DNA of 64,000 bases. Source: Raja brachyura (taxonomy: Eukaryota). A program made the position numbers and the translations under genes. This document shows, piece after piece, positions 9,169 to 54,200 of the stretch (the first letter of the stretch is position 1; each line of letters begins with the position of its first letter). Where the stretch lies: the NCBI GenBank assembly GCA_963514005.1, contig OY740804.1, forward strand, positions 2,232,001 through 2,296,000. Reading direction: 5' to 3'. The notes beneath the pieces are model-generated. The model ran no database searches and was not told the origin of the DNA. It was given only the letters and a program-made list of their open reading frames with translations.

Positions 9169-11293
9169 TTCCCTGGAGGACATTTGCTGTGAAGGACGCA
9201 GTGTTCTGGGATAGAAACTGTAGCCGGTAGGGCATTGTGATGATCACCAGGGGCGCCGGGGAGATGGCAGCCCTACCGGCAGTCTGTTCATTTTTTCATC
9301 TTTTTGTTATTTTTTTGTATTTGTTAAAAGTTTGAATAATGTACCTTGGTTTGTTTTATGTGGGGGGAGGGGGGATCGGGGGAAACTTTTTTTCAGGTTG
9401 TTACCTTCCCGGAGATGTGAGCCATAGCTGGAGCTGGAAGCCGCCTCGAACTGTCGTAAGTCCCACCGCGGAGAGCGGACTTAACATCGGAGCGGATCCC
9501 TTACCTGGGATCGCTCCCACCACGGCCTGCGGACTTACCATCATGGATTCGCAGTCTCGGGAGAGGCAAGTCGGGAGCTCCAATGCCACAGAAGGTTCGA
9601 CCAGCCCCGACACGAGATTGGATCGCTCGGCGCGGGGGAGCTGAACGCGTCTACGCGGGTGGCCCAAACACCACCGGCTACAGGATTCAAGATCATCCCG
9701 TCAACGGAGGGCTCGAGGCCCACGACCGAGGGAGAACAAAAGGGAAGGACTTGAACTTTATTTCGCCTTCCATCACAGTGAGGGATGTGTAGGAGTCACT
9801 GTGGTGGATGTTCATTTTAAAATGTGTTTTTGAGTCTGTTGCTTTTAATTGTATGACTGACCTGGCCAGTGAAATTCCTCGCATGTTGCAAAACATATTT
9901 GGCGAATAAAATCTGATTCTGATTCTTCTGATTCTGATAACTGCCTAACTGACAGTGTAGATTTGAAGAAATCCAACTTTTAAATGTAACTTTAAAACAT
10001 TTAAATATCCCCCTCTGCGTCCCTCTCCTTACAACAATATACAAACACTTTCATAGCTTGTGTATTGACAGCAAAGATCCCATTGTTAAGTCATTTTCAG
10101 TTTTTGGAATGTTCACGGCAGCTTATGTAATTAAGATCCCATTGTGATTGGACAACTGTGGGATGCCATTGTGACATCGCTGGAAGAGTCTCCCTCTCAA
10201 AGGCAGTTATTATTCTCAAAGTTGGCTTTTTTTAAACTTTACATATCAATAACTTGTGAAATATAACAACAAATCTGAAGGAAACATTACATTGACGACG
10301 GGAAAAAAACTGAGTAAGAATCTGCAAAATCCCGGAGACAATCATTCCCATCACCCATTCCCCAAACGTAACCCATTCGACCAACGCAATATTCCACCAC
10401 TCACCCAGAGCCCCCAACTGCGCAAGTGCCGCTCATTGCCCCTCATCCCCAACACTTCCTCCCCCTCCCTCTTCTCTCCCCTCACCTCCTCCCCTCCTCC
10501 ACTCCTCTTTCACCACTCCCTCCTGCTCCTTTCCCCTACCCTCAGCCCCTCCCTACCCTCAGTCAGTCCCTCACACCCCCCATAACTCCTCTCCCCTCCC
10601 TACCCTCCTGACCAATTGGGCTTTGTCTCCCAAACTCTACTGCTGCGCCACCGTGACCACCTATTTATTAAATGTTATCTATGGGTATGGTGTTTCCAAG
10701 CCTATTCTGCTGCTGCAGGTAACCATTTAATTGTTGCATTGTCGGTACATACGACAATTAAACAATCTTGACTGTAGACTCTTGACACCTGAGACCATGT
10801 GATTCACCTAACTTCAGCGACAAACATCCTCTCTTGCTCGGTTCTGTTGAAGGATCTTCATTCTGAATCGTTGCCTCTGTTGCTCCACCACAGATGCTGC
10901 CTGACCCACTGTGTGTCTCCCACATTCCCCTTTATTTTTGTTCCTGTTCTCAACATCTGCAGACTCCTGATTTTCCACATGTTGTTCCGTCCCTGTGTGG
11001 TCATGACCACAAATGGACACAGCTCATAGAACCCGGTGATGTTGCCCGTATTGAACAGGACTTGCACAAAGTTCATACCCAACTCAATGCTGGCGTACAA
11101 AGAATCACTCACACCGGCTGTCTTCAGGGCAGGCAGAAGAGAGTTTATTTCCATTAAAGTCCATTTACAGGGTCAGTTCTCCTCACTGCATGCGATCCGA
11201 AGGGCATGTTTCCCTGCTTTAACTCTGAACTAAACTAAACTAAACTAAACTAAACTAAACTTTGCAAGGGCCCTGCTGAATCAGTGGGAGGTT

Positions 11294-11827
11294 TCACTGG
11301 ATTGTCAGCCGGGCCAATTCTTCACATTCCCTATCACGAAAGGTGGTCCAGACACAGGAATATGTCCCCTCATCTTTCTCTTTTACACCTGTCAGGAGCA
11401 ATGAGCCGTCAAATTCAGGAAAGGGATCTCGATGCATGAACTCCCAGCGGACATCATGGCCCTGATATAGGTAAGGTATTCTAGTATGATTCATGGCAAT
11501 TTCAGCACCATCTTTTCTCCATTTAACTACTCTGAGAGATTCGTAATCTTTGGATACTTTACAGGGCAGCGTAATAGAACCACCCAGAGATGCAACGAGC
11601 ACCTTCATGTTAATCGATGATAGGTGATGACTGTATGTATCAGAATCTGTCTCGTTCGTGCATCTTGAAATCTGTTTAACGTTGACTTGCCGAGGAGCCC
11701 GTGCGTTCCACCCGGGCAAGTTTGCTTCCTCTCCCCATTCTCTGGCGATCGGACCTGTTCCAGTTCCGGAGACTTGCCACACCATCTCCACAAGGACCAT
11801 GAATCCTATCCGTCTCTGCAGTCCCAT
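11294..11827 (-). CDS. Putative secreted prepro single Ig V-type domain protein, paralogue 1 (177 aa)
   Basis: Signal-like MGLQRRIGFMVLVEMVWQVSG, pro-region ending RAPR, V-set motifs GGSITLPC, VKWRK, DGSLLLTGVKEKDEGTYSC; no TM; splice acceptor 4 nt before ATG; AATAAA at 11144-11149 (minus). Confidence 0.88.
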   Translation of the reverse strand: MGLQRRIGFMVLVEMVWQVSGTGTGPIAREWGEEANLPGWNARAPRQVNVKQISRCTNETDSDTYSHHLSSINMKVLVASLGGSITLPCKVSKDYESLRVVKWRKDGAEIAMNHTRIPYLYQGHDVRWEFMHRDPFPEFDGSLLLTGVKEKDEGTYSCVWTTFRDRECEELARLTIQ

Positions 11828-12401
11828 GTTCCTGTGGGTGAAACAACCTTATTGCAACTCAGTAGGATTCATGATGACATTCTCTGAACCTCCCCAGAGT
11901 TGGGGAATCGAGAACCAGAGGACATCTGTTTAAGGTGAGGGGGGGAAAGATTTAATGGGAAACTGAGGGGTGACTTTTTTACACAAAGGGTGGAGGGTGT
12001 TTGGAACGAGCTGCCGGAAGATGTAGTTGAGGCAGGTACTATCACAATGATTAAGAAACAGTTAGACAGGTACATTGATAGGGCAGGATTAGAGGGGTAA
12101 GGGCCAAACGCAGGCAGGTGGGTCTAGTTTTGATGGGGCAAGTTGGTGGGCGCGGGCAAGTTGGGCGGAAGGTCTCGCTGTATGACTCTATGACTCACTT
12201 GTCCCACCCCGGTCATTCCTCCTTCTCCCTGGTCCTGTCTAGCAGAAGGTACAGAAGCTTGAAAGCGCGCACCACCAGACTCAGGAACAGCTTCTTCCCC
12301 TCTGCTATCAGGCTTCTGAACTGGGGGAACAGTGAACAGAGACAATCCCACCCCCATCACTCACAGACACTTGAAGGATCCATAGGGTGGCTACCAGCTC
12401 C

Positions 12402-12627
12402 TTTTATACCTACTCCCGGCTTCTCCTGACCTTCATTGCCTGCGCTCCCGTACATTCAACCAATCACTGCCTCCCACGGAGCATTGGCCGGAGTCAGCCG
12501 TGACCTCTCCACCCTCTGCCAACTGTGTCCTTGCATCAGCCGTTAACGTTTAACAAGAACAACGTCATCACAGCTGCCAGCGGCCAACCAGGCGCCCCAC
12601 ACATCCTGCTTGTGTCTCCACCACGTC
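12402..12627 (-). promoter_or_regulatory. Promoter of Ig paralogue 1: TATA box, ERSE, CCACGTC site
   Basis: TATAAAA 12402-12408 (minus); CCAAT-cactgcctc-CCACG 12460-12478; second CCAAT at ~12483; CCACGTC 12621-12627. Unit-2 copy: TATA 41509-41515, ERSE 41567-41585. Confidence 0.7.
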
Positions 12628-12716
12628 TCGCTCTGGCCAACCATCGCAGTTGAGGCAGAAACTATCCCAAGGTTTAAGAAACAGTTAGACAGGAACAGGT
12701 ATAGGTTAGATTTGGG

Positions 12717-12913
12717 GTACACAAAATGCTGGAGAAACTCAGCGGGTGCAGCAGCATCTATGGAGCGAAGGAGATAGGCAACGTTTCGGGCCGAAACCCT
12801 TCTTCAGACTGATCCCACCCCCATGAAGAAGGGTCTCGGCCCGAAACGTTGCCTATCTCCTTCGCTCCATAGATGCTGCTGCACCCGCTGAGTTTCTCCA
12901 GCATTTTGTGTAC
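12717..12913. repeat. 90-bp near-perfect inverted repeat with 17-nt spacer
   Basis: 12717-12806 and 12824-12913 are reverse complements with one mismatch seen. Confidence 0.92.
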
Positions 12914-13160
12914 TCTCGATTTTCCAGCATCTGCAGTTCCTTCTTAAACACATAGGTTATTGGATGAGTATGGACCAAACATGGACAGATGGGACGAGTG
13001 TAGCTGGGACATGTTGGCCAGTGTGGGCAAGTTGGGCTGAAGGGCCTGTTTCCACGCTGTATCACCCTGTGACTATTACACTATGACATTAAATAAATAA
13101 TGTTTATAAAATGAAACTCCACATAAATCTCATCTTCTCCTCTGGTTGTATACACAACAC

Positions 13161-14351
13161 TCATTGACTGCAGCAGATAAAATGAATGTCACACTGGTGG
13201 TACCAGGGCACCTCTGGAAAATGTTCTTCTCAAGATATGATTGAGAAGACTATGTAACATGGAACAGTACAGCACAGGATCAGGCCCTTCGGCCCACAAT
13301 GTGCGTGCTGCATATGATGCCAAGTTAATCTAATCTCCTCTGCCTGCATGTGATCCATAATCTCTGTTCCCCGCATATCCATGAGATGTTTTAGATAAAG
13401 CCTCTATTGTAACTATTGTATCTGCCACCACCACCCACAGCAGCGGGTTCCAGGCACCCACAACCCTCTGTGCCTCGCAGCTGAGGCTACATTTAGATCC
13501 CAATGTTTAAGAAACAGTGAGTCAGGTACATGGATAGGACAGGTTTGGAGGGATATGTGCCAAACTGAATGTTCTCGAGAGAGAGAGTTAGATTTAGCTC
13601 TTAGTGCTAATGCAATCGAGGGATATGGGGAGAAAGCAGGAACGGGGCACTGATTTAGGATGATCAGCCATGATCATTGTTGAATGGCTGTGCTGGCTCG
13701 AAGGGCTGAATGGCCTACTCCTGCACCAATTTTCATTGTTTCTATGTTTCTACACACTCCCAATGAGGGTCGAAACTGGACTCTAATCAGCAGCCCCAAC
13801 AGTGCAAGAGGCCAATGTAAGGGAGGCTCAGTGATGCAGTGGTAGAGCGCTGCCTTACAGCCCTAGAGACCCGGGTTCAATCCTGACTGTGGGTACTGTC
13901 TGTACGGTGGTTGTACGTTTTCCCTATGACCGTGTGGGTGTCCTCCGGGTGCTACAGTTTCCTGACAGATTTCAAAGATGTGCAGGTTTGTAGGTTAATT
14001 GGCTTCAGTAAATTGTCCCTTGCGTGTAGGTTAGAACTTGTGTACAGGCGATCACTCTAAACAAATCTAAACTAAACTCGTCAACTCGACTCAACTCAGC
14101 TAAAGGCAACTCCATGACACTTAATTTTGCTGCTCAGACCTGTTAAAATATTCTGGATTGGAACAAGTAGGGGCAGTTCAGTTTGACCTGGGATGCAAAT
14201 AATAATGGTTCCGACTGTTAATGTTGAGGAGGGATTTCAATGCGCTGATCAAAGGATAAACTCCCTCTTTCCATCTTGTTCCACTAAAGTCATCAACATC
14301 TAGAGACCACAACATGGCTCCTCCACAGTTGTTGGTCATCAGCCACTGAGC
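13161..14351 (-). pseudogene. Relic of a divergent chitinase paralogue (penultimate exon plus decayed CBM14 exon)
   Basis: 14213-14351 follows a good acceptor and reads AQWLMTNNCGGAMLWSLDVDDFSG...YPLISALKSLL; 139 bp like the live exon but followed by GG, not GT. 13161-13232 reads, with frameshifts, RRTF/FQRCPGTT/CDIHFICCSQ*, aligning with [24 protein letters not shown]. Confidence 0.8.
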
Positions 14352-14583
14352 CTGGGGAAAAGGAAGGAAAACCATGACTTGAAAGTGTCTTTTGTTGATG
14401 AGCCTTTTAGGCAATAAAGCACACGGATATAATATGTAAAAAGCAAAATAATTCAATAAATGAGAGAGCACAATACTAGTGTGTAAAGCCAACATCCTTA
14501 GTGCAACCAAAGACAGTCCATAGACATTCATCGTTGACCTCAGTGTCGTGTCGTGTTCTAGTTGTTGGGAAGGAATTATGGAT

Positions 14584-14947
14584 CCAATCACTGCCTCCCA
14601 CGGGGCATTGGCTGGAGCCAGCCGCGACCAATCCCACCGCACAGCCGGCTCAGATTGAGTATAAACTGTGAAACCAGCGCAGGTGCCAGGGCTGTGGTGG
14701 TGACGTGGCGTGGCTGGGACATCCCAGACACAAGCAGGATGTGTGGGGCACCTGGTTGGCCGCAGGCAGCTGTGATGGCGTTGTTCTTGTTAAACGTTAA
14801 CGGCTGATGCAAGGACACGTTTGGCAGAGGGTGGGGAGGTCAATGATGGTCTGGATAAACGGGGAGAAGGTATAAAAGGGGCGAGCGATGGCAGGAGATG
14901 GAAGTAAGACCGGCCTCGTCAGCCTGTGTGGAGACTCCGGAGCTGGT
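14584..14947 (+). promoter_or_regulatory. Promoter and non-coding exon 1 of Ig paralogue 2: distal ERSE, UPRE, TATA, splice donor
   Basis: CCAAT-N9-CCACG 14584-14602; TGACGTGG 14701-14708; TATAAAA 14871-14877; donor ctg|gtaac at 14946; intron ends 15492. Unit-2 copy: ERSE 43590-43608, UPRE 43707-43714, TATA 43909-43915. Confidence 0.72.
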
Positions 14948-15496
14948 AACCACCCCTGTGGATCCTTCAAGTGTCTGTGAGTGATGGGGGTGGGATTGTC
15001 TCTGTTCACTGTTCCCCCAGTTCAGAAGCCTGATAGCAGAGGGGAAGAAGCTGTTCCTGAGTCTGGTGGTGCGTGCTTTCAAGCTTCTGTACCTTCTGCT
15101 AGACAGGACCAGGGAGAAGGAGGAATGACCGGGGTGGGACATGTCTTTGATTTTTTTGGTTGTAGATGGAGTGACTGGTGGGGAGTGTGGTCCGTGTGAT
15201 GGACTGGGCTCCATCCACAACTCTCTGCAATTTCTTGTGGTCTTGGGCTTAGAGCTGTTCCCAAACCAAGCTGTGATGCAACCCGACAGTCTGCTTTCCG
15301 TGGTGCATCTGTAGACGTTTGTAAGAGACATTGGAGACTTGCCGTATTTCCTTGGTCTCCAAGGAGGTAGATGCATTGGTGTGTCTCCTTGGCTGCCACT
15401 TCACATTGCCCAGTGTGGTGGCAGCAACTTCAGAGAATATCATCATGAATCCCACTGAGTTGCAATAAGGTGACCCATTGTTTTACCCACAGGAAC

Positions 15497-15997
15497 ATGG
15501 GACTGCAGAGATGGATAGGATTCATGGTCCTTGTGGAGATGGTGTGGCAAGTCTCCGGAACTGGAACAGGTCCGATCTCCAGAGAATGGGGAGAGGAAGC
15601 AAACTTTCCCGGGTGGAACGCACGGGTTCCTCGGCAAGTTAACAAACAAGAAACTCCAGAATGCGGTGTTAAGGCAGATTTGACCAAGATGATGAAGATG
15701 ACGGCACGCAAGGGTAGTTCTGCTACGCTACCCTGTGAAATACCCACAGGGAAGGATGGACCCACGCATTTTGTGGTCACCTGGAGGAAAGGGAAGGTGA
15801 CACTGGGCGTGTTTACTAAAGGGAAAGGTCCAATCTATCCAGGGGGACCCGACCGCTGGAGGTTCGTGGATCCAAACATGGTTGATGCCTCGTTGATCGT
15901 CACGGATGTAAGCGAGACTGATGCTGGGATGTATTCCTGTGCTTGGTTCACTTGCCAAGGGGAATGTAGACTAAATGTCAAGCTGGCAGTGAAGTGA
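15497..15997 (+). CDS. Putative secreted prepro single Ig V-type domain protein, paralogue 2 (166 aa)
   Basis: ATG at 15497 after acceptor ttttacccacag|gaac; same leader, RVPR, GSSATLPC, VTWRK, DASLIVTDVSETDAGMYSC; AATAAA 16429-16434 followed by a GT-rich element. Confidence 0.9.
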   Translation: MGLQRWIGFMVLVEMVWQVSGTGTGPISREWGEEANFPGWNARVPRQVNKQETPECGVKADLTKMMKMTARKGSSATLPCEIPTGKDGPTHFVVTWRKGKVTLGVFTKGKGPIYPGGPDRWRFVDPNMVDASLIVTDVSETDAGMYSCAWFTCQGECRLNVKLAVK

Positions 15998-17095
15998 AAC
16001 CTCCCACTGATTCAGCACAGACCCCTCCAAGTGTCAGGAGCAACAGGCAGTGGCAGGTCAGCACAAACACAATAACATCCTTCATTATAAACTTGACACA
16101 CATAGGCCAACAACAGCATTATATATTGTAGTCACTGAATTCATCATGAGGGGAATAGAGGGGTGGACACTAAGCATCTTTTACCTGGGGTACGGGAATC
16201 AAGAACCAAGGGACATACATTTAAGGTGAGAGGGGCAAGATTTAATATTAACCTGAGGGGCAATATTTTCACTCATGGGGTGGTGGGTTTATGGAACTGT
16301 CCGGTGGGGCGGGAACTGTAACAATATTTAATACACACTTGCTACAGGGAAAGGTTTAGGGGGATATGGGGTGAACACAGTGCAATGGGACAGACCCTGC
16401 TTGCACCGGTAAATGTACCATTAATGGAAATAAACTCTCTTGAAGACAGCCGGTGGTGTGAGTGATTCTTTGTGCGCCAGCATTGAAGTTGGGTGTGAAC
16501 TTTGTGCAACTCTTGCTCACTACGGGCAGCATCGCCGGGTTCTATGAGCTGTGTCCATTATTGGTCATGACCACACAGGGACGGAACAACATGTGGAAAA
16601 TCAGGAGACTGCAGATGTTGCGAACAGGGACAAAAGTAAAGGGGAATGTTTTTCAGGAACAAAACAGGAACAAAAGTAAAGGCAGATGACACAACAGTAG
16701 GCGGGTTTGCAGATAGTGGAGATGGTTGTGAAAAATTGCAGCAGGATCTTGAAATATTGGCCAGGTGGGCTGAGGAACGGTTGATGGAATTTAATACAGA
16801 GTAATGTGAGGTGCTGTATTTGGGGGTGTCCAACATGTGCAGGACCTACACAGTGAATGGCCCGGCTCTGGGGAGTGTTGTAGAGCAGAGGTTTGGAGGG
16901 GTATGGACCAAACACAGGCAGGAGAGACTATTGCAGCTGGGACATGTTGACCAGTGTGGGCAAGTTGGGCTGAAGGGCCTGTTTCCACGCTGTATCACTC
17001 TGTGACTACTACACTATGACATTAAATAAATAATGATTATAAAATGAAACTCCACATAAATCTCACCTTCTCCTCTGGCTGTATACACAGCACAC

Positions 17096-17167
17096 TCATT
17101 GACTGCAGCAGATACAATGAATGTCACACTGGTGGTACCAGGGCACCTCTGGAAAATGTTCTTCTCA
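17096..17167 (-). pseudogene. Second decayed CBM14 exon relic
   Basis: Direct repeat of the 13161 segment; reads FQRCPGTT/CDIHCICCSQ*. Unit-2 copy at ~46921-46992. Confidence 0.6.
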
Positions 17168-17500
17168 AGATGTGATTGAGAAGACGGTGTAACATAGAAC
17201 ATGGAACAGTACAGCACAGGAACAGGCCCTTCGGCCCACAATGTCCGTGATGAACATGATCACCATGGAAAATTGGTTCTGACTGTCTACCCTATCTGTA
17301 TCTCATACTTTTATAACTTGTGCAAGAGGCCAATGCAAGGGAGGCACAATGGCGCAGAGCTAGTGTTGCTGCCTTCCAGCGCTATGTGTGGGGCGCCTGG
17401 TTGGCCGCTGGCAGCTGGGATGACGTTGTTCTTGTTAAACGTTAACGGCTGATGCAAGGACACGTTTGGCAGAGGGTGGAGAGGTCACGGCTGACTCTGG

Positions 17501-17656
17501 CCAATGCTCCGTGGGAGGCAGTGATTGGTTGAAAGTACGTGAGCGCAGGCAATGAGGGTCAGGAGAAGCCGGGAGTAGGTATAAAAGGGGCGAGCGATGG
17601 CAGGAGATGTGAACAAGACCGGCCTCGTCACCCTGTGTGGAGACTCCGGAGCTGGT
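17501..17656 (+). promoter_or_regulatory. Promoter and non-coding exon 1 of Ig paralogue 3: CCAAT, reverse ERSE, TATA, splice donor
   Basis: CCAAT 17501-17505; CGTGG-N9-ATTGG 17510-17528; TATAAAA 17580-17586; donor at 17655; acceptor ends 18173. Confidence 0.72.
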
Positions 17657-18177
17657 AACCACCCCTGTGGATCCTTCAAGTGTCTGTGAGTGATGGGAGT
17701 GGGATTGTCTCTGTTCACTGTTCCCCCAGTTCAGAAGCCTGATAGCAGAGGGGAAGAAGCTTTCCTTGAGCCTGGTGTTGCTCGAATGACAGATGTGGGA
17801 CAAGTGATGGAGTCATACAGCGAGACCTTCGACCCAACTTGCCCGCGCCCACCAACTTGCCCCATCAAAACTAGACCCACCTGCCTGCTTTTGGCCCTTA
17901 CCCTTCTAATCCTGCCCTATCAATGTACCTGTCGAACTGTTTTTTAATCATTGTGATAGTACCTGCCTCAACTACCTCTTCCGGCAGCTCGTTCCAAACA
18001 ACCTCCACCCTTTGTGTATAAAAGTCACCCCTCAGTTTCCCATTAAATCTTTCCCCCCCTCACCTTAAACCGATGTCCTCGGGTTCTCGATTCCCCAACT
18101 CTGGGCGGGTTCAGAGAATGTCATCATGAATCCTACTGAGTTGCAATAATGTGACCCATTGTTTTACCCACAGGAAC

Positions 18178-18849
18178 ATGGGACTGCAGAGATGGATAGG
18201 ATTCATGGTCCTTGTGGAGATGGTGTGGCAAGTCTCTGGAATTGCAACAGGTCCGATCTCCAGAGAATGGGGAGAGGAGGCAAACTTGCCCGGGTGGAAC
18301 GCACCTGCTCCTCGGCAAGTCAATGAAGATCCAAATCCACAATGCAGTGTTAACCTCGCTCCGGACAAGATGAGATGGACGGAGGTGACGGCCAGTAAGG
18401 GTGGTTCTGCTCAGCTATCCTGCAAAATGCCCAAAGAAGATGGTGCAGCCGATAAAGTTGTGGTGCTGTGGACGAAAGGAAAAGACACGATCGCCGTGTT
18501 TACTGACAGGAAGGGTGCGCAATATCCAGGGTCAACCGGACGCTGGAAGTTCATGAATGCAAACGTGGTTGACACACGGGACGCCTCGTTGGTCCTGGCG
18601 AGGCTGGAAAAGGATGATGCTGGGAAATATTCCTGCGCTTGGCTAGTTAATAACGTGCCTTGTAAACAAAACACCAAAACCCCCCCCCTCTCTGCCCACA
18701 CTCCCAACCTGTGCAAGTCCTCCTGTAGCGACTCCACCTATTTTTGTATCCCTTCAATACCGTTGGCACTCATCTTCCTTAGCAGCCTCACGTGCGGCAC
18801 TTTATCAAAGGCTTCAGAAGGGGACTTCCGAACCAGGGTCACAGTTTAA
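18178..18849 (+). CDS. Ig V-type paralogue 3, C-terminus replaced by antisense CR1 sequence (possible pseudogene)
   Basis: Same leader (PAPR), GGSAQLSC, VLWTK, DASLVLARLEKDDAGKYSC; homology ends at PCKQNTK (18678), then reverse-strand CR1 RT sequence (SLQEDLHRLGVWAER); the family's post-stop motif is missing. Confidence 0.78.
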   Translation: MGLQRWIGFMVLVEMVWQVSGIATGPISREWGEEANLPGWNAPAPRQVNEDPNPQCSVNLAPDKMRWTEVTASKGGSAQLSCKMPKEDGAADKVVVLWTKGKDTIAVFTDRKGAQYPGSTGRWKFMNANVVDTRDASLVLARLEKDDAGKYSCAWLVNNVPCKQNTKTPPLSAHTPNLCKSSCSDSTYFCIPSIPLALIFLSSLTCGTLSKASEGDFRTRVTV

Positions 18850-19130
18850 GAATAAGGGGTCGGCCATTTAGGACTGAGATGAGGAATAAAATAACCACCC
18901 AGAGAGTTGTGAATCTGTGGAATTCTCTGCCACAGAAGGCAGTGGATGCCAATTCACTGGATGGTTTCAAGAGAGAGTTAGATTTAGCTCTTAGGGGTAA
19001 CGGAATCAAGGGATATGAGCAAAAAGCAGGAACGGGGCACTGATTCTGGATGATCAGCCATGATCATATTGAATGGCGGTGCTGGCTCGAAGGGCCGAAT
19101 GGATTACTCCTCTGCCTATTTTCTATGTTT
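18679..19130. mobile_element. CR1 fragments (antisense piece, then sense 3' end) abutting Ig paralogue 3
   Basis: Minus-strand RT piece followed by GHSLRIRGRPFRTEMR...RVVNLWNSLP and TTTCTATG tail. Confidence 0.8.
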
Positions 19131-22374: not shown

Positions 22375-22985
22375 TCACTACTGATGGGTTTTCAATCACT
22401 ACTGATGGGTCTTCCCTATAGGGGGGTTGGGGGGTGGAGCACTAGGACCCAGCAGAATCGTCACTACTGATGGGTCTTTCCTATAGGAATGTGGGTTTGG
22501 GGGGGCACTAGGACCCAGCAGAGTCATCATCAAAATTATAGAGCTCTCTTTGATCTTTGGTCATCATCACTGATGGGTCTTCCCTATGGAGGGGAGGAGG
22601 GGGGCACTAGGACCCAGCAGAGTCATCACCCCTGATGGGTCTTCCCTATAGAGGGGAGGGGGGGCACTAGGACCCAGCAGAGTCATCACCACTGATGGGT
22701 CTTCCCTAAAGAGGGGAGGGGGGGGCACTAGGACCCAGCAGAGTCATCACCCCTGATGGGTCTTCCCTATAGGAGTGTGGGTTTGGGGGGGCATTAGGAC
22801 CCAGCAGAGTCATCACCACTGATGGGTCTTCCCTATAGAGGGGAGGGGGGGCACTAGGACCCAGCAGAGTCATCACCCCTGATAGGTCTTCCCTATAGAG
22901 GGGAGGGGGGGCACTAGGACCCAGCAGAGTCATCACTACTGATCGGTATTCCCCATAGGGGAGTGGGGGGGGGGGGGCACTAGAT
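22375..22985 (+). repeat. ~60-bp G-rich minisatellite (~10 units)
   Basis: GGCACTAGGACCCAGCAGAGTCATCACCACTGATGGGTCTTCCCTATAGAGGGGAGGGGGG repeated. Confidence 0.93.
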
Positions 22986-24842: not shown

Positions 24843-27800
24843 CTAAGGCCAGTTGCAGCATTTACAGGATGAGTCGAAGACCAATCCTGCGGCACAGCTC
24901 TTCACGTAGGTCCGACCATCATCGCACTGGTAGAACTTGTTCTTGTTCTTGGGATCGGGGAAGGTACCATTCGCTTTGCCCTGACAGAAGCCACTGCCTC
25001 CACCACCGCTGCCTCCACCACCGCTGCCTCCACCACCGCTAGGAGCATCAGTAGGTGGGACCGCCGGCTTCAATGTTGTCTTGGATGGGACGCAAGCTGC
25101 AGAGAAACACAGTTCGTTATCTTCTCCTAAAGTCTTAGGAGAATTAGGTGATTTGGCCCATGGACTTACCCCACCTTTCAATCATGGTTGATCTATCCCT
25201 CCCTCTCAACCCCATTCTCCTGCCTTCTCCCCATAAACCCTGACACCCGAACTAATCAAGAATCTGTCGATCACCGCCTTAGAACGCAGGTCCACAAAGT
25301 ATGAATATCCCAGTCAATGGGATTATGCCACTGAACCCCCCTCTCACCAACTCCAGAGTGGTCCTGACCTCACATCTACCCCAGATGCTGGTTCATAAAC
25401 AGAGACACAATGTGCTGGAGTAACTCAGTTGCTTGTTCTCTATACCCACCACTCCATGTGTGTAAAACGTAGCTATCGCACCTAGTCTTACCACTATCTG
25501 CCTCCACCACCCCCGGTAGCGTGTTCCAGGCACCCACCACCCTCTGTGTGAAAGACTGGTCCTGCACATCTCAATTACCTCCAGAGATGCCAAGGCCAGA
25601 GTGCAGAGTGTTGATGAGGGGGTAGGGTCCCTGGTGACAGAAGGCACCAGAGAAGTCATCCAGAGCCAGATCCCAGACCATAGCTCCTCCAAAGTTGTTC
25701 TTCTTCAGCCACTCAACCTGGAAGACACAGTTCACATCTTTACACCAGCATCCCTCAGTCAATAATGGCTTCTACGATGCGCTGTAGAAAGCTTTTTATC
25801 GGCATTCAACACAGCACGGTTTGGGAATGGCTCCATCCAAAACCCGCAGGAAATTGCAGGGAGTTGCTGACGCAGCCCAAACCATCACGTAAACCAACCT
25901 CCCTTCCATTGACTCCATCTACACCTCGCGTTGCCTCAGCAAGGCCACCAGCATAATCGAGGAACAGTCTCACCCCAACACCAGAGAAATAAAACAGAAA
26001 TTCCAAGTTTCCCCGATGTGAATCCTAACCCCTTTCTCCTGCCTTCTCCCCATAACCCCTGATACCTGAACACCATGAGTTTATGGTGAGCTGGAAATAT
26101 TTTGTAGAATGTAATGATTCCAAGGATTTTGAAGCATAATTCTGGAGCTCACTGTTGGAAACTCTGCAGTAGATATTGAGATAAACGTGACCACGATGGC
26201 TCACGTGGAAAGGGTGGAACTTCGATGGTCAGATGTACCATGTCTCCGAAGCTCTTGACGTTGTCATAGCCGACCCATATTCCATTCTTGAAGGCGTACG
26301 GGGTGTCCTGTGGGGCATTCCATTCGGCGGTGGCACCATTCAGGAACCCGCAGATCTGTCCAGAGAAGGAGATGTTAGGGACCAATCTTGCCGAAGTGGA
26401 AAAAAATCATGAGAGGAACCGATCAGGTAGATGCAAAGTGTCTCTTGCCCAGAGTCGGGGAATCGAGAACCAGAGGACATAAGGTGAGGGAGAAAGATTT
26501 AATAGGAATGGTGCTGGCTTGGAGGGCCGAATGGCCGACTCCTGCACCTATTGTCTATTAAACCTGAGGGGTAACGATTTGACACCGATGGTAGTGGGTG
26601 TATGGAACAGATGGGTGGAGATAGTGACAAAAGCTGGAGGGGAACAGGAGACAAAATAGTGTCAGATACTGATAGAAGAGGAACAGAGAGATGTGCAAAG
26701 AGAGGAGGAGAGAGATATGTGAAGAGAAGGGAGAAAGACATGAAAGAAGGATAGAAAGAGGAGAGGAGGGAAAGATATATAAAGAGAGGAAAGAGAGATA
26801 TGTCCAGAAAGAGGAGGAGAGAGATGTAAAGCGCGAGGGAGGGATGTGGAGAGAAGGAGATAGCGGGGAGGGCAAATAGGAAGGGGAGGATAGAAGGGAA
26901 ATGGGGATCTCTGAGAGAAGAGGAGGGGAACGGAGAACGTGGGTGTGCGATGTTTCGGATGGAGATCCTTCCTCATGTGTCCATCTATGTTGGTTATTCA
27001 GTATTGGATTGGAAGATAACATTGAGTAAAGGGCCACGCGGTTGGATTGGTCGGTAGGTACAGTACCTCATAGTAGGCCAGGAAGCCGGCTTGGCGGGTG
27101 AATTTGCCGGCTGGTCCAGCGCCTCCTGCTGGGGCACCCACGGCCGTGCTGGACGAGGTCAGTCTGAAGGTGTGTCCGTAGGTGGGGAAGCCCACATTCA
27201 ACTTGTCCACTGGAGCCCCCTTGCTCTTCCAGTAGTTCATGGCATATTCCTGCAGGGACACAGTTGACATCAAAGGACTTTAGGCTCATGTTTAACATTA
27301 GGTTTATTATTGTCACGTGTACCGAGGCACAGTGAAAAGCTTCCAAACAGATCAGATAATACCGTACATAAATACAATCAAGTCAAACTCAGGTACAATA
27401 GATAGAACAAAGGGGAAGGTACAGATTGCAGAATATAATTCTCAGCATCGTAGTGCATCAGTTCCACAGACAAAGTCCAATGTCCGCAATGGGGTAGAGG
27501 TGAATCGGACAGTACCCTAGCTTATGGAACAACTGATCAGAAGCCTGATAGCAGAGGGCAAGGAGCTGTTCCTGAGTCTGGTGGTGCGCGCTTTCAAGCT
27601 TCTGTACCTTCTGCTGGACAGGACCAGGGAGAAGGAGGAATGACCGGGGTGGGACAAGCCTTTGATTCTGTTGGCTGTTTTTCTGAGGCAGCGTGAAGTG
27701 TAGATGGAGTCAATGGTGGGGAGTGGGGTCTGTGTGATGGACTGGGCTCCATCCACAACTCTCTGCAACTTCTTGTGGTCTTGGGCTCAGAGCTGTTCCC

Positions 27801-40378: not shown

Positions 40379-40912
40379 TCACTGGATTGTCAGCCGGGCC
40401 AATTCTTCACATTCCCTATCACGAAAGGTGGTCCAGACACAGGAATATGTCCCCTCATCTTTCTCTTTTACACCTGTCAGGAGCAATGAGCCGTCAAATT
40501 CAGGAAAGGGATCTCGATGCATGAACTCCCAGCGGACATCATGGCCCTGATATAGGTAAGGTATTCTAGTATGATTCATGGCAATTTCAGCACCATCTTT
40601 TCTCCATTTAACTACTCTGAGAGATTCGTAATCTTTGGATACTTTACAGGGCAGCGTAATAGAACCACCCAGAGATGCAACGAGCACCTTCATGTTAATC
40701 GATGATAGGTGATGACTGTATGTATCAGAATCTGTCTCGTTCGTGCATCTTGAAATCTGTTTAACGTTGACTTGCCGAGGAGCCCGTGCGTTCCACCCGG
40801 GCAAGTTTGCTTCCTCTCCCCATTCTCTGGCGATCGGACCTGTTCCAGTTCCGGAGACTTGCCACACCATCTCCACAAGGACCATGAATCCTATCCGTCT
40901 CTGCAGTCCCAT
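40379..40912 (-). CDS. Ig V-type paralogue 1, unit-2 copy (177 aa)
   Basis: Translation identical to 11294-11827; AATAAA 40229-40234 (minus). Confidence 0.88.
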   Translation of the reverse strand: MGLQRRIGFMVLVEMVWQVSGTGTGPIAREWGEEANLPGWNARAPRQVNVKQISRCTNETDSDTYSHHLSSINMKVLVASLGGSITLPCKVSKDYESLRVVKWRKDGAEIAMNHTRIPYLYQGHDVRWEFMHRDPFPEFDGSLLLTGVKEKDEGTYSCVWTTFRDRECEELARLTIQ

Positions 40913-42165
40913 GTTCCTGTGGGTTAAACAACCTTATTGCAACTCAGTAGGATTCATGATGACATTCTCTGAACCCGCCCAGAGTTGGGGAATCGAGAAC
41001 CAGAGGACATCTGTTTAAGGTGAGGGGGGGAAAGATTTAATGGGAAACTGAGGGGTGACTGTTTTACACAAAGGGTGGAGGGTGTTTGGAACGAGCTGCC
41101 GGAAGATGTAGTTGAGGCAGGTACTATCACAATGATTAAGAAACAGTTAGACAGGTACATTGATAGGGCAGGATTAGAGGGGTAAGGGCCAAACGCAGGC
41201 AGGTGGGTCTAGTTTTGATGGGGCAAGTTGGTGGGCGCGGGCAAGTTGGTGGGCGCGGGCAAGTTGGGCCGAAGGTCTCGCTGTATGACTCTATGACTCC
41301 ATCACTTGTCCCACCCCGGTCATTCCTCCTTCTCCCTGGTCCTGTCTAGCAGAAGGTACAGAAGCTTGAAAGCGCGCACCACCAGACTCAGGAACAGCTT
41401 CTTCCCCTCTGTTATCAGGCTTCTGAACTGGGGGAACAGTGAACAGAGACAATCCCACCCCCATCACTCACAGACACTTGAAGGATCCACAGGGTGGCTA
41501 CCAGCTCCTTTTATACCTACTGCCGGCTTCTCCTGACCTTCATTGCCTGCGCTCCCGTACATTCAACCAATCACTGCCTCCCACGGAGCATTGGCGGGAG
41601 CCAGCCGCGACCTCTCCACCCTCTGCCAACTGTGTCCTTGCATCAGCCGTTAACGTTTAACAAGACCAACGTCATCCCAGCTGCCAGCGGCCAACCAGGC
41701 GCCCCACACATCCTGCTTGTGTCTCCACCACGTCTCGCTCTGGCCAACCATCGCAGTTGAGGCAGAAACTATCCCAAGGTTTAAGAAACAGTTAGACAGG
41801 AACAGGTATAGGTTAGATTTGGGGTACACGAAGAAGGGTCTCGGCCCGAAACGTTGCCTATCTCCTTCGCTCCATAGATGCTGCTGCACCCGCTGAGTTT
41901 CTCCAGCATTTTGTGTACTCTCGATTTTCCAGCATCTGCAGTTCCTTCTTAAACACATAGGTTATTGGATGAGTATGGACCAAACATGGACAGATGGGAC
42001 TAGTGTAGCTGGGACATGTTGGCCAGTGTGGGCAAGTTGGGCTGAAGGGCCTGTTTCCACACTGTATCACCCTGTGACTATTACACTATGACATTAAATA
42101 AATAATGTTTATAAAATGAAACTCCACATAAATCTCATCTTCTCCTCTGGTTGTATACACAACAC

Positions 42166-43357: not shown

Positions 43358-44604
43358 CTGGGGAAAAGGAAGGAAAACCATGACTTGAAAGTGTCTTTTG
43401 TTGATGAGCCTTTTAGGCAATAAAGCACACGGATATAATATGTAAAAAGCAAAATAATTCAATAAATGAGAGAGCACAATACTAGTGTGTAAAGCCAACA
43501 TCCTTAGTGCAACCAAAGACAGTCCATAGACATTCATCGTTGACCTCATTGTCGTGTCGTGTTCTAGTTGTTGGGAAGGAATTATGGATCCAATCACTGC
43601 CTCCCACGGGGCATTGGCTGGAGCCAGCCGCGACCAATCCCAACGCACCGCCGGCTCAGATTGAGTATAAACTGTGAAACCAGCGCAGGTGCCAGGGCTG
43701 TGGTGGTGACGTGGCGTGGCTGGGACATCCAGTCCGAATGTTGGCCGGAGCGAGACGTGGTGGAGACACAAGCAGGATGTGTGGGGCGCCTGGTTGGCCG
43801 CTGGCAGCTGGGATGGCGTTGTTCTTGTTAAACGTTAACGGCTGATGCAAGGACACGTTTGGCAGAGGGTGGAGAGGTCAATGAGGGTCTGGAGACACCG
43901 GGAGAAGGTATAAAAGGGGCGAGCAATGGCAGGAGATGGAAGTAAGACCGGCCTCGTCAGCCTGTGTGGAGACTCCGGAGCTGGTAACCACCCCCTGTGG
44001 ATCCTTCAAGTGTCTGTGAGTGATGGGGGTGGGATTGTCTCTGTTCTCTGTTCCCCAGTTCAGAAGCCTGATAGCAGAGGGGAAGAAGCTGTTCCTGAGT
44101 CTGGTGGTGCGTGCTTTCAAGCTTCTGTACCTTCTGCTAGACAGGACCAGGGAGAAGGAGGAATGACCGGGGTGGGACAAGTCTTTGATTTTTTTGGTTG
44201 TAGATGGAGTCGCTGGTGGGGAGTGTGGTCCGTGTGATGGACTGGGCTCCATCCACAACTCTGCAATTTCTTGTGGTCTTGGGCTCAGAGCTGTTCCCAA
44301 ACCAAACTGTGATGCAACCTGACAGTCTGCTCTCCGTGGTGCATCTGTAGAAGCTTGTGAGAGACATTAGAGACTTGCCGTATTTCCTTGGTCTCCAAGG
44401 AGGTAGATGCATTGGTGTGTCTCCTTGGCTGCCACTTTAATGTTGTTGGTCAACGACAGGTCAAAGCAACTTAAAATAAACCAGGCAGGAGCTGAAGAGG
44501 CTGCACAGCGACATTGCCCAGTGTGGTGGCAGCAGCTTCAGAGAATGTCATCATGAATCCTACTGAGTTGCAATAATGTGACCCATTGTTTCACCCACAG
44601 GAGC

Positions 44605-45114
44605 ATGGGACTGCAGAGATGGATAGGATTCATAGTCCTTGTGGAGATGGTGTGGCAAGTCTCTGGAACTGGAACAGGTCCGATCTCCAGAGAATGGGGA
44701 GAGGAAGCAAACTTGCCCGGGTGGAACGCACGGGTTCCTCGGCAAGTCAACAAACAAGAAACTCCAGAATGCGGTGTTAAGCCAGATTTGACCAAGATGA
44801 CGGAGATGACGGCACGCAAGGGTGGTTCTGCTACGCTACCCTGTGAAGTACCCACAGGGAAGGATGGACCCACGCATTTTGTGGTCACCTGGAGGAAAGG
44901 GAAGGGGACACTGGGCGTGTTTACTAAAGGGAAAGGTCCAATCTATCCAGGGGGTGCCGGCCGCTGGAAGTTCATGAAACCAAACGTGGCTGAGACACGG
45001 GATGCCTCGTTGATCGTCACGGGTTTACGCGAGACTGATGCTGGGATGTATTCCTGTGCTTGGTTCACTAGCCAAGGGGAATGTAGACTAAATGTCAAGC
45101 TGGCAGTGAAGTGA
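44605..45114 (+). CDS. Ig V-type paralogue 2, unit-2 copy (169 aa)
   Basis: ATG 44605 after acceptor; leader, RVPR, V-set motifs; AATAAA 45546-45551. Confidence 0.9.
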   Translation: MGLQRWIGFIVLVEMVWQVSGTGTGPISREWGEEANLPGWNARVPRQVNKQETPECGVKPDLTKMTEMTARKGGSATLPCEVPTGKDGPTHFVVTWRKGKGTLGVFTKGKGPIYPGGAGRWKFMKPNVAETRDASLIVTGLRETDAGMYSCAWFTSQGECRLNVKLAVK

Positions 45115-46338: not shown

Positions 46339-47167
46339 TGGTTGTGAAAAATTGCAGCAGGATATTGAAATATTGGCCAAGTGGGCTGAGGAACGGTTGA
46401 TGGAATTTACTACAGAGTAATGTGAGGTGTTGTATTTGGGGGGAGTCCAACATGTGCAGGACCTACACAGTGAATGGCCCGGCTCTGGGGAGTGTTGTAG
46501 AGCAGAGGGATCTATGAGTGAAGGTGCATGGTTCCTTGAAGATGCAGTCGCAGGTGGGTAGGGTGGTCAAAAAGGCTTTTAGCACATTGGCCTTCATCAG
46601 TCAGAGTATTCAGTATGGAGGTTGGGAGGTCATCTTGCAGCTGCAGAAGATTGGTGAGGCCACATTTAGATCCCAATGTTTCATAAACAGTTGGACAGGT
46701 ACATGGATAGGACAGGTTTGGAGGGATATGGAACAAACACAGGCAGGTGAGACTATTGTAGCTGGGGCATGTTGGCCAGTGTGGGCAAGTTGGGCTGAAG
46801 GGCCTGTTTCCACGCTGTATCACTCTGTGACTACTACACTATGACATTAAATAAATAATGATTATAAAATGAAACTCCACATAAATCTCACCTTCTCCTC
46901 TGGCTGTATACACAGCACACTAATTGACTGCAGCAGATACAATGAATGTCACACTGGTGGTACCAGGGCACCTCTGGAAAATGTTCTTCTCAAGATGTGA
47001 TTGAGAAGACGGTGTAACATAGAACATGGAACAGTACAGCCCAGGAACAGGCCCTTCGGCCCCCAATGTCCGTGCTGAACATGATCACCATGGAAAATTG
47101 GTTCTGACTGTCTACCCTATCTGTATCTCATACTTTTATAACTTGTGCAAGAGGCCAATGCAAGGGA

Positions 47168-50100: not shown

Positions 50101-50367
50101 CTGATCTCCCACATGTTGCAGGCTGAGCAAGGCACGGGACCAATCTCCACTGACACCTTACTCTATTAAATATATATATTTTTTAAATTTATTTTTTATT
50201 AAACACAAAACTTTATTCTTTAAACTTTACTAATAAATACTAATAAATATTGAATCCCTAACACCCAGAATCCTTAGCTCCCAGAATCCTTAAACCTGTA
50301 GGCAGAAATGTAGAAATGTAAATCCCGGGTTGCAGCCAATCAGCTGCTTCCTCTGGTCCTCTTCATC
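47168..50367 (-). mobile_element. CR1 LINE 5' portion (ORF1 zinc finger and esterase, APE endonuclease, start of RT), 3'-truncated
   Basis: CSACNMWE...CRKC; VIGDSIVR...VHIGTND (SGNH esterase); CLNARSIRNK, GITETW, MGDFN, SDHN (APE); KSPGPD, NYRPVSLTS, QHGF (RT). Only in unit 2. Confidence 0.92.
49377..50026 (-). mobile_element. 3' end of an L1/Tx1-type LINE nested in CR1 ORF1
   Basis: CPRDGC...ETVAHLFAECGFAQRVW zinc knuckle, A-rich tail, TSD CAATGC at 49371-49376 and 50027-50032. Confidence 0.8.
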
Positions 50368-53464: not shown

Positions 53465-54200
53465 GGAGCACTAGGACCCAGCAGAGTCGTCACTACTGAT
53501 GGGTCTTTCCTATAGGAGTGTGGGTTTGGGGGGGCACTAGGACCCAGCAGAGTCATCATGAAAATTATAGAGCTCTCTTTGATCTTTGGTCATCACCACT
53601 GATGGGTCTTCCCTATGGAGGGGAGAAGGGGGGCACTAGGACCCAGCAGAGTCATCACCACTGATGGGTCTTCCATATAGGAGTGTGGGTTTGGGGGGGC
53701 ATTAGGACCCAGCAGAGTCATCACCACTGATGGGTCTTCCCTATAGACGGGAGGGGGGGCACTAGGACCCAGCAGAGTCATCACCCCTGATGGGTCTTCC
53801 CTATAGAGGGGAGGGGGGGCACTAGGACCCAGCAGAGTCATCACCCCTGATGGGTCTTCCCTAAAGAGTGGAGGGGGGGCACTAGGACCCAGCAGAGTCA
53901 TCACCACTGATGGGTCTTCCCTAAAGAGGGGAGGGGGGGCACTAGGACCCAGCAGAGTCATCACCCCTGATGGGTCTTCCCGACAGGAGTGTGGGTTTGG
54001 GGGGGCATTAGGACCCAGCAGAGTCATCACCACTGATGGGTCTTCCCTATAGAGGGGAGGGGGGGCACTAGGACCCAGCAGAGTCATCACCCCTGATAGG
54101 TCTTCCCTATAGAGGGGAGGGGGGGCTCTAGGACCCAGCAGTCATCACTACTGATCGGTATTCCCTATAGGGGAGTGGGAGGGGGGGGGGGGCACTAGAT
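53465..54200 (+). repeat. ~60-bp G-rich minisatellite, unit-2 copy (~12 units)
   Basis: Same unit, different copy number and variant order. Confidence 0.93.

What the first reader, a model, noticed from the sequence alone, without database searches (positions are those of the whole stretch)
12460..17586. Perfect ER-stress elements in every Ig-gene promoter
Seen: CCAATCACTGCCTCCCACG (exact CCAAT-N9-CCACG) at 12460-12478, 14584-14602, 17510-17528 (reverse), 41567-41585 and 43590-43608. It lies ~50 bp upstream of TATA in paralogues 1 and 3. TGACGTGG occurs at 14701 and 43707, and CCACGTC at 12621. Established: ERSE binds NF-Y with ATF6/XBP1 and UPRE binds XBP1s; these typify ER chaperone genes, and XBP1s drives professional secretory cells. 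Inference: these Ig genes are tied to the unfolded-protein response or to plasma-cell/glandular secretory programs, or the promoter was captured from an ER-chaperone gene.
Basis: partly seen in the sequence, partly recalled or inferred. Interest (0 to 1): 0.76.

Follow-up and report, generated by a model that had tools for sequence, protein, structure and literature searches.

The report
Shared ER-stress-like motif in skate Ig-like promoters
Five neighbouring skate genes for small secreted antibody-like proteins all carry the same textbook "ER-stress element" in their promoters, but the five copies come from one ancestral promoter, and whether the motif actually links these genes to the stress response has not been tested.

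Summary
The exact 19-mer CCAAT-N9-CCACG occurs at all five stated places and nowhere else in the window. Each copy lies upstream of one of the window's five Ig-like genes (5 of 5).

The five copies are not five pieces of evidence:
- They sit in a low-copy promoter cassette of about 250 nt, shared by three old paralogues.
- Two of these paralogues were doubled by a ~29-kb tandem duplication, and the cassette is kept 92-99% alike, probably by gene conversion.
- This amounts to one ancestral event, with a chance of about 5x10^-4 per cassette.
- The motif is not clearly better conserved than its flanks (0 of 19 against 5 of 27 variable columns, p about 0.06).

Word depth of the cassette equals that of unique sequence.

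Little skate gene models confirm the non-coding first exon just downstream.

An exact UPRE (paralogue 2 only) and a TGATGCAA site (all five) add some support for a bZIP/UPR-type promoter.

No RNA data were available, and orthologous promoters could not be fetched. ER-stress or secretory-cell coupling therefore remains a hypothesis (about 0.35).

A word search of the scan's earlier notes found no previous ERSE note.

The parts
12460..12478 (+). ERSE-consensus 19-mer of paralogue P1. The gene is on the minus strand, so the motif is antisense to it, 51 nt upstream of its TATA.
14584..14602 (+). ERSE-consensus 19-mer of P2. It is a displaced copy in sense orientation, 268 nt upstream of the TATA. 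Homology to the other cassettes spans only 14584-14629 and starts exactly at CCAAT.
17510..17528 (-). ERSE-consensus 19-mer of P3, antisense to the gene, 51 nt upstream of the TATA.
41567..41585 (+). ERSE copy of P1', the duplicate of P1 in the second ~29-kb unit.
43590..43608 (+). ERSE copy of P2', the duplicate of P2 in the second unit, 300 nt upstream of the TATA.
12397..12660 (-). Promoter cassette of P1. It holds TATAAAA at 12402-12408, a second CCAAT at 12483-12487, TGATGCAA at 12531-12538, GTTAAACGTTAAC at 12542-12554 and a near-UPRE at 12621. It lacks 61 nt just after the TATA.
14584..14976 (+). Promoter cassette and exon 1 of P2. It holds the distal ERSE, an exact UPRE TGACGTGG at 14701-14708, GTTAAACGTTAAC at 14789-14801, TGATGCAA at 14805-14812, TATAAAA at 14871-14877 and upstream ATGs at 14888 and 14898. 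Exon 1 ends at 14976.
17384..17685 (+). Promoter cassette and exon 1 of P3. TATAAAA is at 17580-17586 and an upstream ATG at 17597. Exon 1 ends at 17685. A SINE-like sequence abuts the upstream edge.
41504..41767 (-). Promoter cassette of P1', with TATAAAA at 41509-41515.
43590..44015 (+). Promoter cassette and exon 1 of P2'. The UPRE is at 43707-43714 and TATAAAA at 43909-43915. The donor motif GTCTGTGAGT lies at 44012-44021, so exon 1 ends at 44015 and the intron starts at 44016.
11294..11827 (-). Coding exon of P1: 177 aa, signal peptide plus a V-set Ig domain.
15497..15997 (+). Coding exon of P2: 166 aa, V-set.
18178..18849 (+). Coding exon of P3: V-set. Its C-terminus departs from the little-skate orthologue after residue 167 and the ORF runs on into a repeat.
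40379..40912 (-). Coding exon of P1', identical to P1 at 534 of 534 nt.
44605..45114 (+). Coding exon of P2'.

Best explanation
The 19-mer is one ancestral site inside a low-copy promoter cassette of about 250 nt.

**The cassette.** It holds two inverted CCAAT boxes, several ACGT-core bZIP-type sites and a TATA box, and is followed by a non-coding exon 1. It belongs to a skate-specific family of small secreted V-set Ig proteins.

**How it spread.** The cassette reached all five genes of the window by gene duplication, then by a ~29-kb tandem duplication. Gene conversion keeps it nearly uniform while the mature domains diverge.

**How it most likely works.** It is probably an ordinary NF-Y-dependent TATA promoter. 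The CCACG half at the ERSE spacing is there in sequence, but nothing here shows that it is used.

**Shown:** motif, position, descent, low copy number, exon structure.
**Inferred:** NF-Y binding and promoter activity.
**Not shown:** any coupling to ER stress.
For: **Descent**
- The window is a tandem repeat of ~29-31 kb.
- Two of the five sites are unit duplicates of two others, at offsets 29107 and 29006.
- All five lie in alignable cassettes.
- Cassette part A is 92-99% identical between paralogues, whereas the rest of the coding sequence is only 60-71% identical.
- The paralogues predate the split from Leucoraja. P3 is 86% identical to the L. erinacea protein P0003 but only 57-60% to its paralogues.

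**Gene conversion**
- P1 and P1' have identical coding sequence (534 of 534) but differ in the cassette. Their clustered changes are shared with P3 and with P2/P2' respectively.
- Residues encoded by exon 1 are species-specific yet shared by all paralogues within a species.

**Promoter**
- TATA, splice donor and acceptor are present in all five genes.
- L. erinacea models start in exon 1.
- CpG observed/expected is 0.78-0.80 in the cassette against 0.48 for the window.

**Not a repeat**
- Cassette bins have word depth 0-110, like coding bins. Transposon bins reach 10^4 to 6x10^6.

**No motif-specific conservation**
- 12 of about 205 columns vary among P1, P1' and P3 (P2 and P2' were left out because they lack the proximal piece). 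The chance of 19 invariant columns is then about 0.3.
- Over the stretch shared by all five copies, 0 of 19 motif columns vary against 5 of 27 flank columns. Fisher p is about 0.06.
Against: - An exact ERSE in a single 250-nt cassette is unlikely by chance. The 0.12 hits expected per 64 kb scale to about 5x10^-4.
- I tested the four-motif UPR set of PMC10700025 (passages read). All 7 exact hits in the window (5 ERSE-I, 2 UPRE) lie in the cassettes, which cover 2.13% of the window.
- TGATGCAA occurs in all five cassettes, which account for 5 of its 9 occurrences in the window.
- ACGT cores are about 4.6-fold enriched in the cassettes (17 of 172).
- In P2 the motif survived a rearrangement intact, with the breakpoint exactly at its edge.

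All of this fits a real ATF6/XBP1-type site better than a chance CCACG.
Confidence: 0.5

Rival explanations
1. The site is a working ERSE. NF-Y on CCAAT recruits ATF6, or XBP1s or a CREB3L-type ER-membrane bZIP binds CCACG, helped by the UPRE and the C/EBP-ATF-like site. Output of these secreted Ig-like proteins would then be tied to ER load or to a professional secretory-cell programme.
For: - The consensus and spacing are exact in all 5 promoters.
- The motif lies 51 nt upstream of the TATA in 3 of 5 promoters.
- An exact UPRE TGACGTGG occurs only in the P2 and P2' promoters.
- TGATGCAA is present in all five cassettes, and ACGT cores are enriched.
- The ERSE is intact after the P2 rearrangement, with 0 of 19 motif columns varying against 5 of 27 flank columns.
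- Literature passages read: ATF6 binds CCACG only when NF-Y holds CCAAT, XBP1s binds on its own, and the UPRE is TGACGTGG/A (PMC8301375).
- PMC5890977 found only 39 human genes with an exact ERSE-I within 10 kb upstream of the start site.
- CrebA/CREB3L factors directly raise cell-type-specific secreted cargo (PMC3003312).
Against: - There is one ERSE per promoter. [quoted passage not shown]
- The genes encode cargo, not folding machinery.
- In P2 and P2' the site is moved and inverted.
- The UPRE is missing in P1 (a 7-of-8 match only) and in P3.
- Conservation is explained by homogenisation of the whole cassette, including intron sequence that is 98% identical (I5).
- No RNA, start-site or induction data exist.
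Confidence: 0.35
2. The cassette is not the working promoter. Transcription starts elsewhere, so the motif's position relative to the TATA means nothing.
For: - No RNA run was found.
- L. erinacea models include an ATG that lies only 17 nt after the first T of the TATA. Either the start site is not the canonical TATA-directed one, or the models were extended.
- P1 lacks 61 nt just after the TATA.
Against: - Exon 1 with a consensus donor lies directly downstream in all five genes.
- Exon 1 is part of the annotated little-skate models. Any start site must therefore lie at or upstream of exon 1, within about 100 nt of the motif in P1 and P3.
- The cassette is the best-conserved and most CpG-rich part of each locus.
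Confidence: 0.08
3. The motif belongs to a high-copy repeat or transposon that merely sits next to these genes.
For: - Transposon-derived sequence flanks the cassette on both sides and fills intron 1.
- A SINE-like piece abuts the P3 cassette.
Against: - Word depth in the cassette bins, in the order X3/X6/X4/X5, is 14.7/64/26.5/29 for 12350-12549, 0/9.6/42/23 for 14550-14749 and 20/110/31/23 for 14750-14949. These values match unique coding bins. Repeat bins are 10^3 to 10^5 times deeper.
- In the window the cassette occurs only at the five genes.
Confidence: 0.03
4. The promoter was captured from an ER-chaperone gene.
For: Only the motif itself.
Against: - The cassette has no homology to anything else in the window.
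- The only foreign gene relic nearby is a chitinase exon, not a chaperone.
- There is one ERSE rather than the several said to be usual in chaperone promoters (PMC5890977 passage).
Confidence: 0.03

Closest known systems
ERSE-I (CCAAT-N9-CCACG) of mammalian ER-chaperone promoters (HSPA5/GRP78, HSP90B1, CALR, also XBP1 and DDIT3)
   Same: - All ten specified bases and the 9-nt spacing match exactly.
- The site is promoter-proximal, 51 nt upstream of a TATA box in 3 of 5 copies.
- CCAAT is available for NF-Y.
   Different: - There is a single copy per promoter.
- The genes encode secreted Ig-like cargo of a lineage-specific family, not folding machinery.
- Two copies are displaced by 268-300 nt and inverted.
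- Binding and induction are untested.
UPRE / XBP1s and CREB3-family sites (TGACGTGG/A)
   Same: An exact TGACGTGG lies about 100 nt downstream of the displaced ERSE in P2 and P2'. These are its only occurrences in 64 kb.
   Different: - It is absent from P3, and P1 and P1' have a 7-of-8 match only.
- It appears to have arisen by a local duplication of the near-UPRE segment (my reading).
Direct control of secreted cargo genes by ER-membrane bZIP factors (CrebA/CREB3L, PMC3003312; CREB3L3 and acute-phase genes, PMC6616197)
   Same: These are secreted-protein genes with ACGT-core bZIP sites in a compact promoter. That gives a precedent for cargo genes being direct targets.
   Different: No expression or binding data exist for the skate genes. 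The tissue is unknown.
Multigene families with a homogenised 5' cassette and a hypervariable mature domain (the layout noted by the scan's earlier readers for this family)
   Same: The promoter and exon 1 are 92-99% alike, the leader is 86-87% alike and the mature domain is 60-71% alike between paralogues.
   Different: Here the homogenised block is shown to include the promoter, which is why the motif recurs.

Membership tests
ERSE-I (ATF6/NF-Y ER stress response element) | Sequence CCAAT-N9-CCACG with exactly 9 nt between the halves | tested here: met
   5 of 5 sites are exact. The definition comes from passages of PMC8301375 and PMC5890977.
ERSE-I (ATF6/NF-Y ER stress response element) | Location in the proximal promoter of the regulated gene | tested here: inconclusive
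   The site is 51 nt upstream of TATAAAA in P1, P1' and P3, and 268 and 300 nt upstream in P2 and P2'. Exon 1 is supported by little-skate models. No transcription start site was mapped because no RNA run was found.
ERSE-I (ATF6/NF-Y ER stress response element) | NF-Y binds the CCAAT half, and ATF6 or XBP1s binds the CCACG half | not testable with these tools
   Needs EMSA or ChIP.
ERSE-I (ATF6/NF-Y ER stress response element) | Confers induction by ER stress | not testable with these tools
   Needs reporter or expression assays. No RNA data were available.
ERSE-I (ATF6/NF-Y ER stress response element) | Motif kept in orthologous promoters beyond the background level | not tested
Within the window the test has little power: 0 of 19 against 5 of 27 variable columns, p about 0.06.
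UPRE (XBP1s site TGACGTGG/A) | Exact 8-mer in the promoter | tested here: met
   Met in 2 of 5 promoters (P2 and P2', at 14701 and 43707). P1 and P1' have 7 of 8, and P3 has none.
High-copy repeat / transposon-borne motif | Many copies in the genome, unrelated to the genes | tested here: not met
   Cassette bins have word depth 0-110 in four runs, against 10^4 to 6x10^6 for repeat bins. In the window the cassette occurs only at the five genes.
Immunoglobulin (antibody) genes | V segment with rearrangement signals and separate constant exons | tested here: not met
   Each gene is a single coding exon that holds the signal peptide and a complete V-set domain and ends in a stop codon. The relatives are uncharacterised skate proteins. 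PDB sequence matches are weak. Rearrangement signals were not searched for.

The most novel reading that the evidence does not exclude
A fast-evolving, skate-specific family of secreted single-V-domain proteins is driven by a promoter cassette that holds ERSE, UPRE and a C/EBP-ATF-like site. Gene conversion keeps the cassette uniform across paralogues. The cargo genes themselves would then be direct targets of ATF6, XBP1s or CREB3L-type ER-membrane bZIP factors. That would make them an ER-load-coupled or acute-phase-like output of hypervariable immune-type effectors in a cartilaginous fish.
Probability: 0.3. Interest if true: 0.55.

Novelty: new member of a known kind. Interest (0 to 1): 0.3.

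Why it matters
If the motif works, it would be a clear case of a lineage-specific secreted Ig-like gene family wired directly to the ER-stress or secretory-capacity transcription factors. A promoter homogenised by gene conversion would keep all paralogues under one control while their binding domains diversify. It would also point to the tissue and conditions in which to look for this undescribed family.

If it does not work, the case shows that a motif recurring in 'every promoter' of a duplicated family counts as one observation.

Tried and rejected
**RNA evidence.** The look-up of sequencing runs listed 6 runs from 3 organisms. None is on record as RNA and all are kept as contigs, so no start site, tissue or expression level could be obtained.

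**Orthologous promoters.** The little-skate and Rhinoraja loci could not be fetched.

**Contigs of other organisms.** Read laying covered the displaced ERSE with one 781-nt contig of organism C (record 20, 13993-14724). No difference row falls on any of the three ERSE sites in the laid stretch. However, 113 difference rows were not shown, so 'unchanged' cannot be claimed.

**Metagenome scan.** A scan for the double-CCAAT/CGTGG pattern gave 2 hits, L001 and L002. Neither has any flanking similarity to the cassette. I treated them as chance matches and dropped them.

**Rfam.** A search over 11000-19000 at E up to 0.1 gave 7 sub-threshold miRNA-like matches. All lie on a palindromic repeat at 12744-12884, and none on a cassette.

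**PDB sequence search.** A search with P2 gave only weak or spurious matches (designed repeat proteins, and a poliovirus-receptor V domain at E about 0.006).

**Retroviral LTR origin.** I considered this because CCAAT plus TATA is typical of an LTR. I set it aside because the cassette is low-copy. I also saw no poly(A) signal downstream of the TATA when reading the sequence.

**Literature.**
- 'ERSE' with 'elasmobranch' gave 4 papers, none relevant by title.
- XBP1/ATF6 with skate/shark gave 9 papers, none on promoters of cartilaginous fish (listings only).
- 'Leucoraja erinacea' with IgSF terms listed no paper on this family among the 10 shown of 196 (listing only).
- Supplementary tables of PMC5890977 and PMC10700025, which list genes with an ERSE, were not opened. 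They could refine the base rate I quote.

**Spliced model.** The exons were searched apart and the reading frame was worked out by counting.

Full report
**Observation.**
- The 19-mer CCAATCACTGCCTCCCACG is present exactly at 12460 (+), 14584 (+), 17510 (-), 41567 (+) and 43590 (+). There is no other site within two mismatches.
- The general ERSE-I pattern gives the same five hits. Shuffles expect 0.12 hits per window.
- TGACGTGG lies at 14701 and 43707 only. The shorter GACGTGG-type core also lies at 12621 and 41728.

**What the genes are.**
- The window is a tandem repeat of about 29-31 kb. Unit starts are at 1, 28514 and 59728.
- Local tblastn with the window's own products and seven skate relatives finds exactly five Ig-like coding exons:
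  - P1, 11294-11827 (-)
  - P2, 15497-15997 (+)
  - P3, 18178-18849 (+)
  - P1', 40379-40912 (-)
  - P2', 44605-45114 (+)
- The expected P3' is gone. From 47166 to about 50370 a LINE fragment takes its place, and only a relic of the P3 tail remains at 50347-50430.
- Each product is a signal peptide plus one V-set domain (Pfam V-set, E 1e-7 to 1e-9).
- The word-based protein search returned 7 relatives. Six are uncharacterised proteins of Leucoraja erinacea and one is from Rhinoraja longicauda.
- These are IgSF genes of skates, not antibody genes.

**Promoter anatomy.**
- All five genes share TATAAAA, an exon 1 ending GTCT|GTGAGT, and an acceptor CACAG|GA(A/G)CATGG placed 4 nt before the start codon.
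- The L. erinacea models begin with a 31-residue peptide, MAGDENKTDP...FKCLN, before MGLQRW.
- The window's exon 1 encodes the same peptide (P3; P2), and tblastn places it there. The exon 1 to exon 2 splice is therefore conserved, and the cassette lies directly upstream of a used exon.
- One problem remains. That ATG lies only 17 nt after the first T of the TATA. A canonical TATA-directed start would fall downstream of it.
- P1 lacks 61 nt right after the TATA.
- No start site could be mapped, because none of the six runs found is on record as RNA.

**Position of the motif.**
- In P1, P1' and P3 the motif is antisense to the gene and ends 51 nt before the TATA.
- In P2 and P2' a 64-nt piece carrying it is missing from that place.
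- A 46-nt copy lies in the opposite orientation, 268 and 300 nt upstream of the TATA. Its homology starts exactly at the first C of CCAAT.
- Just upstream of that copy lies a relic of a chitinase exon. The stretch 14287-14355 is 78% identical to 25653-25721 of the intact GH18/CBM14 gene.

**One event, not five.**
- Two of the five sites are unit duplicates of two others.
- The remaining three belong to paralogues whose cassettes are 92-99% identical in part A. Their leaders are 86-87% identical and the rest of the coding sequence 60-71%.
- The paralogues are old. P3 is 86% identical to L. erinacea P0003 but only 57-60% to its paralogues.
- High identity extends into the transposon-derived start of intron 1 (98%, I5). 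This argues for homogenisation of a whole 5' block rather than selection on single motifs.
- Conversion is visible directly. P1 and P1' have identical coding sequence (534 of 534) but differ in the cassette by clustered changes next to the motif. P1 shares its states with P3, and P1' shares its states with P2 and P2'.
- Residues encoded by exon 1 differ between the two species but are shared by all paralogues within each species.

**Is the motif better kept than its surroundings?** Barely.
- Among P1, P1' and P3, 12 of about 205 columns vary. P2 and P2' were left out because they lack the proximal piece. Nineteen invariant columns would then occur with probability about 0.3.
- Over the stretch shared by all five copies, 0 of 19 motif columns vary against 5 of 27 flank columns. 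One-sided Fisher p is about 0.06.
- A 33-nt stretch that holds GTTAAACGTTAAC and TGATGCAA is equally invariant in all five.

**Is it a repeat?** No.
- I laid contigs of four runs from two other organism labels on 12150-18149.
- The cassette bins have summed word depths of 0-110, like the coding bins at 7-105.
- Transposon bins reach 10^4 to 6x10^6.
- The tool warns that contig depth is not a copy number. A contrast of three to five orders of magnitude is enough to reject a high-copy element.
- Rfam finds nothing on the cassettes.

**How much does the match itself mean?**
- For one ancestral 250-nt cassette, the chance expectation is about 0.12 x 250/64000, or 5x10^-4.
- As a semi-independent test I used the four motifs defined in PMC10700025 (passages read): ERSE-I, ERSE-II, UPRE [CA]CACGTCA and the ATF4 site. 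All 7 exact hits in the window (5 ERSE-I, 2 UPRE) lie in the cassettes, which cover 2.13% of the window. There were 0 ERSE-II and 0 exact ATF4 hits.
- The 8-mer TGATGCAA occurs in all five cassettes (5 of 9 in the window). ACGT cores are 17 of 172 in 2.13% of the sequence.
- The cassette is also a small CpG-rich patch, with observed/expected 0.78-0.80 against 0.48 for the window. That partly explains the ACGT excess.
- The UPRE is confined to the P2 lineage. From my reading, it looks like a local duplicate of the near-UPRE segment of the cassette.

**Literature.**
- Passages of PMC8301375 give the rules: ERSE is CCAAT-N9-CCACG, ATF6 binds only with NF-Y on CCAAT, XBP1s binds without it, and the UPRE is TGACGTGG/A.
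- PMC5890977 (passages) counted 535 exact ERSE-I in the human genome, with 39 genes having one within 10 kb upstream of the start site. An exact promoter-proximal ERSE is therefore rare. The same paper says chaperone promoters usually carry several.
- PMC3003312 (passages) shows that CrebA/CREB3L factors directly raise cell-type-specific secreted cargo. PMC6616197 (passages) links CREB3L3 to acute-phase genes under ER stress. A cargo gene as a direct target therefore has precedent.
- I found no paper on ER-stress elements in cartilaginous-fish promoters (listings only) and none on this family (listing only).

**Verdict.**
- The five-fold recurrence reflects concerted evolution of a family promoter.
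- A functional ERSE is a reasonable but untested hypothesis. I put it at about 0.35.
- An ordinary NF-Y/TATA promoter in which the CCACG half is not used is at about 0.5.
- Small weights go to a start site elsewhere (0.08), a repeat (0.03) and capture from a chaperone gene (0.03).
- The comparative test in other skates and a mutated-reporter assay would settle it.

Noticed in passing
window 12716-12915: A palindromic, hairpin-forming repeat lies between the P1 promoter and the next transposon. It has the highest word depth of the laid stretch (2.2-6.0 million in bin 12750-12949). It gives sub-threshold miRNA-like Rfam matches at 34-50 bits, against gathering scores of 80-100. It is probably a MITE-like element.
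   Followed up: partly
window 24843-27273 (-) and 14287-14355: A chitinase gene (GH18 exons plus a CBM14 chitin-binding exon) sits between the Ig-like genes. A 78%-identical relic of one of its exons lies 230 nt upstream of the displaced ERSE of P2. This marks a rearrangement junction.
   Followed up: partly
window 47166-50370: In the second repeat unit the whole P3 gene (promoter and coding exon) is replaced by a LINE fragment with reverse-transcriptase and endonuclease ORFs on the minus strand. Only the last ~84 nt of the P3 tail survive, at 50347-50430.
   Followed up: partly
window 18178-18849: P3 matches its little-skate orthologue (86% over 167 residues) up to ...CKQNTK. It then departs, and its ORF runs on for 56 more residues into a repeat. 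The last strand of the V domain is therefore altered. It may be a pseudogene or a variant C-terminus.
   Followed up: partly
window 14888-14976 and 17597-17685: Exon 1 holds two upstream ATGs. The first is in frame with the main start codon (89 nt of exon 1 plus 4 nt of exon 2 make 31 codons, as in the L. erinacea models). The second is in another frame. P1 lacks both because of a 61-nt gap after its TATA. Whether these ATGs are in the mRNA depends on the unmapped start site.
   Followed up: partly
window 12397-12660 vs 41504-41767: P1 and P1' have identical coding sequence (534 of 534), yet their promoter cassettes differ: 3 of 106 and 1 of 36 positions, plus a cluster next to the ERSE. The variant states are shared with other paralogues, a patchwork typical of gene conversion between promoters.
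   Followed up: yes
window 15617-15999 vs 16358-17174: In contigs of another organism label, the P2 coding exon carries more differences (9 of 212 and 9 of 197) than the noncoding stretches downstream (0 of 199, 1 of 158 and 0 of 196) (table 8, run X3).
   Followed up: no
window 22720-22971 and 53628-54185: Tandem repeats of 60/66 nt (D1) contain an ORF reading MTLLGPSAPPPLYREDxSGV several times. The copy number differs between the two units.
   Followed up: no
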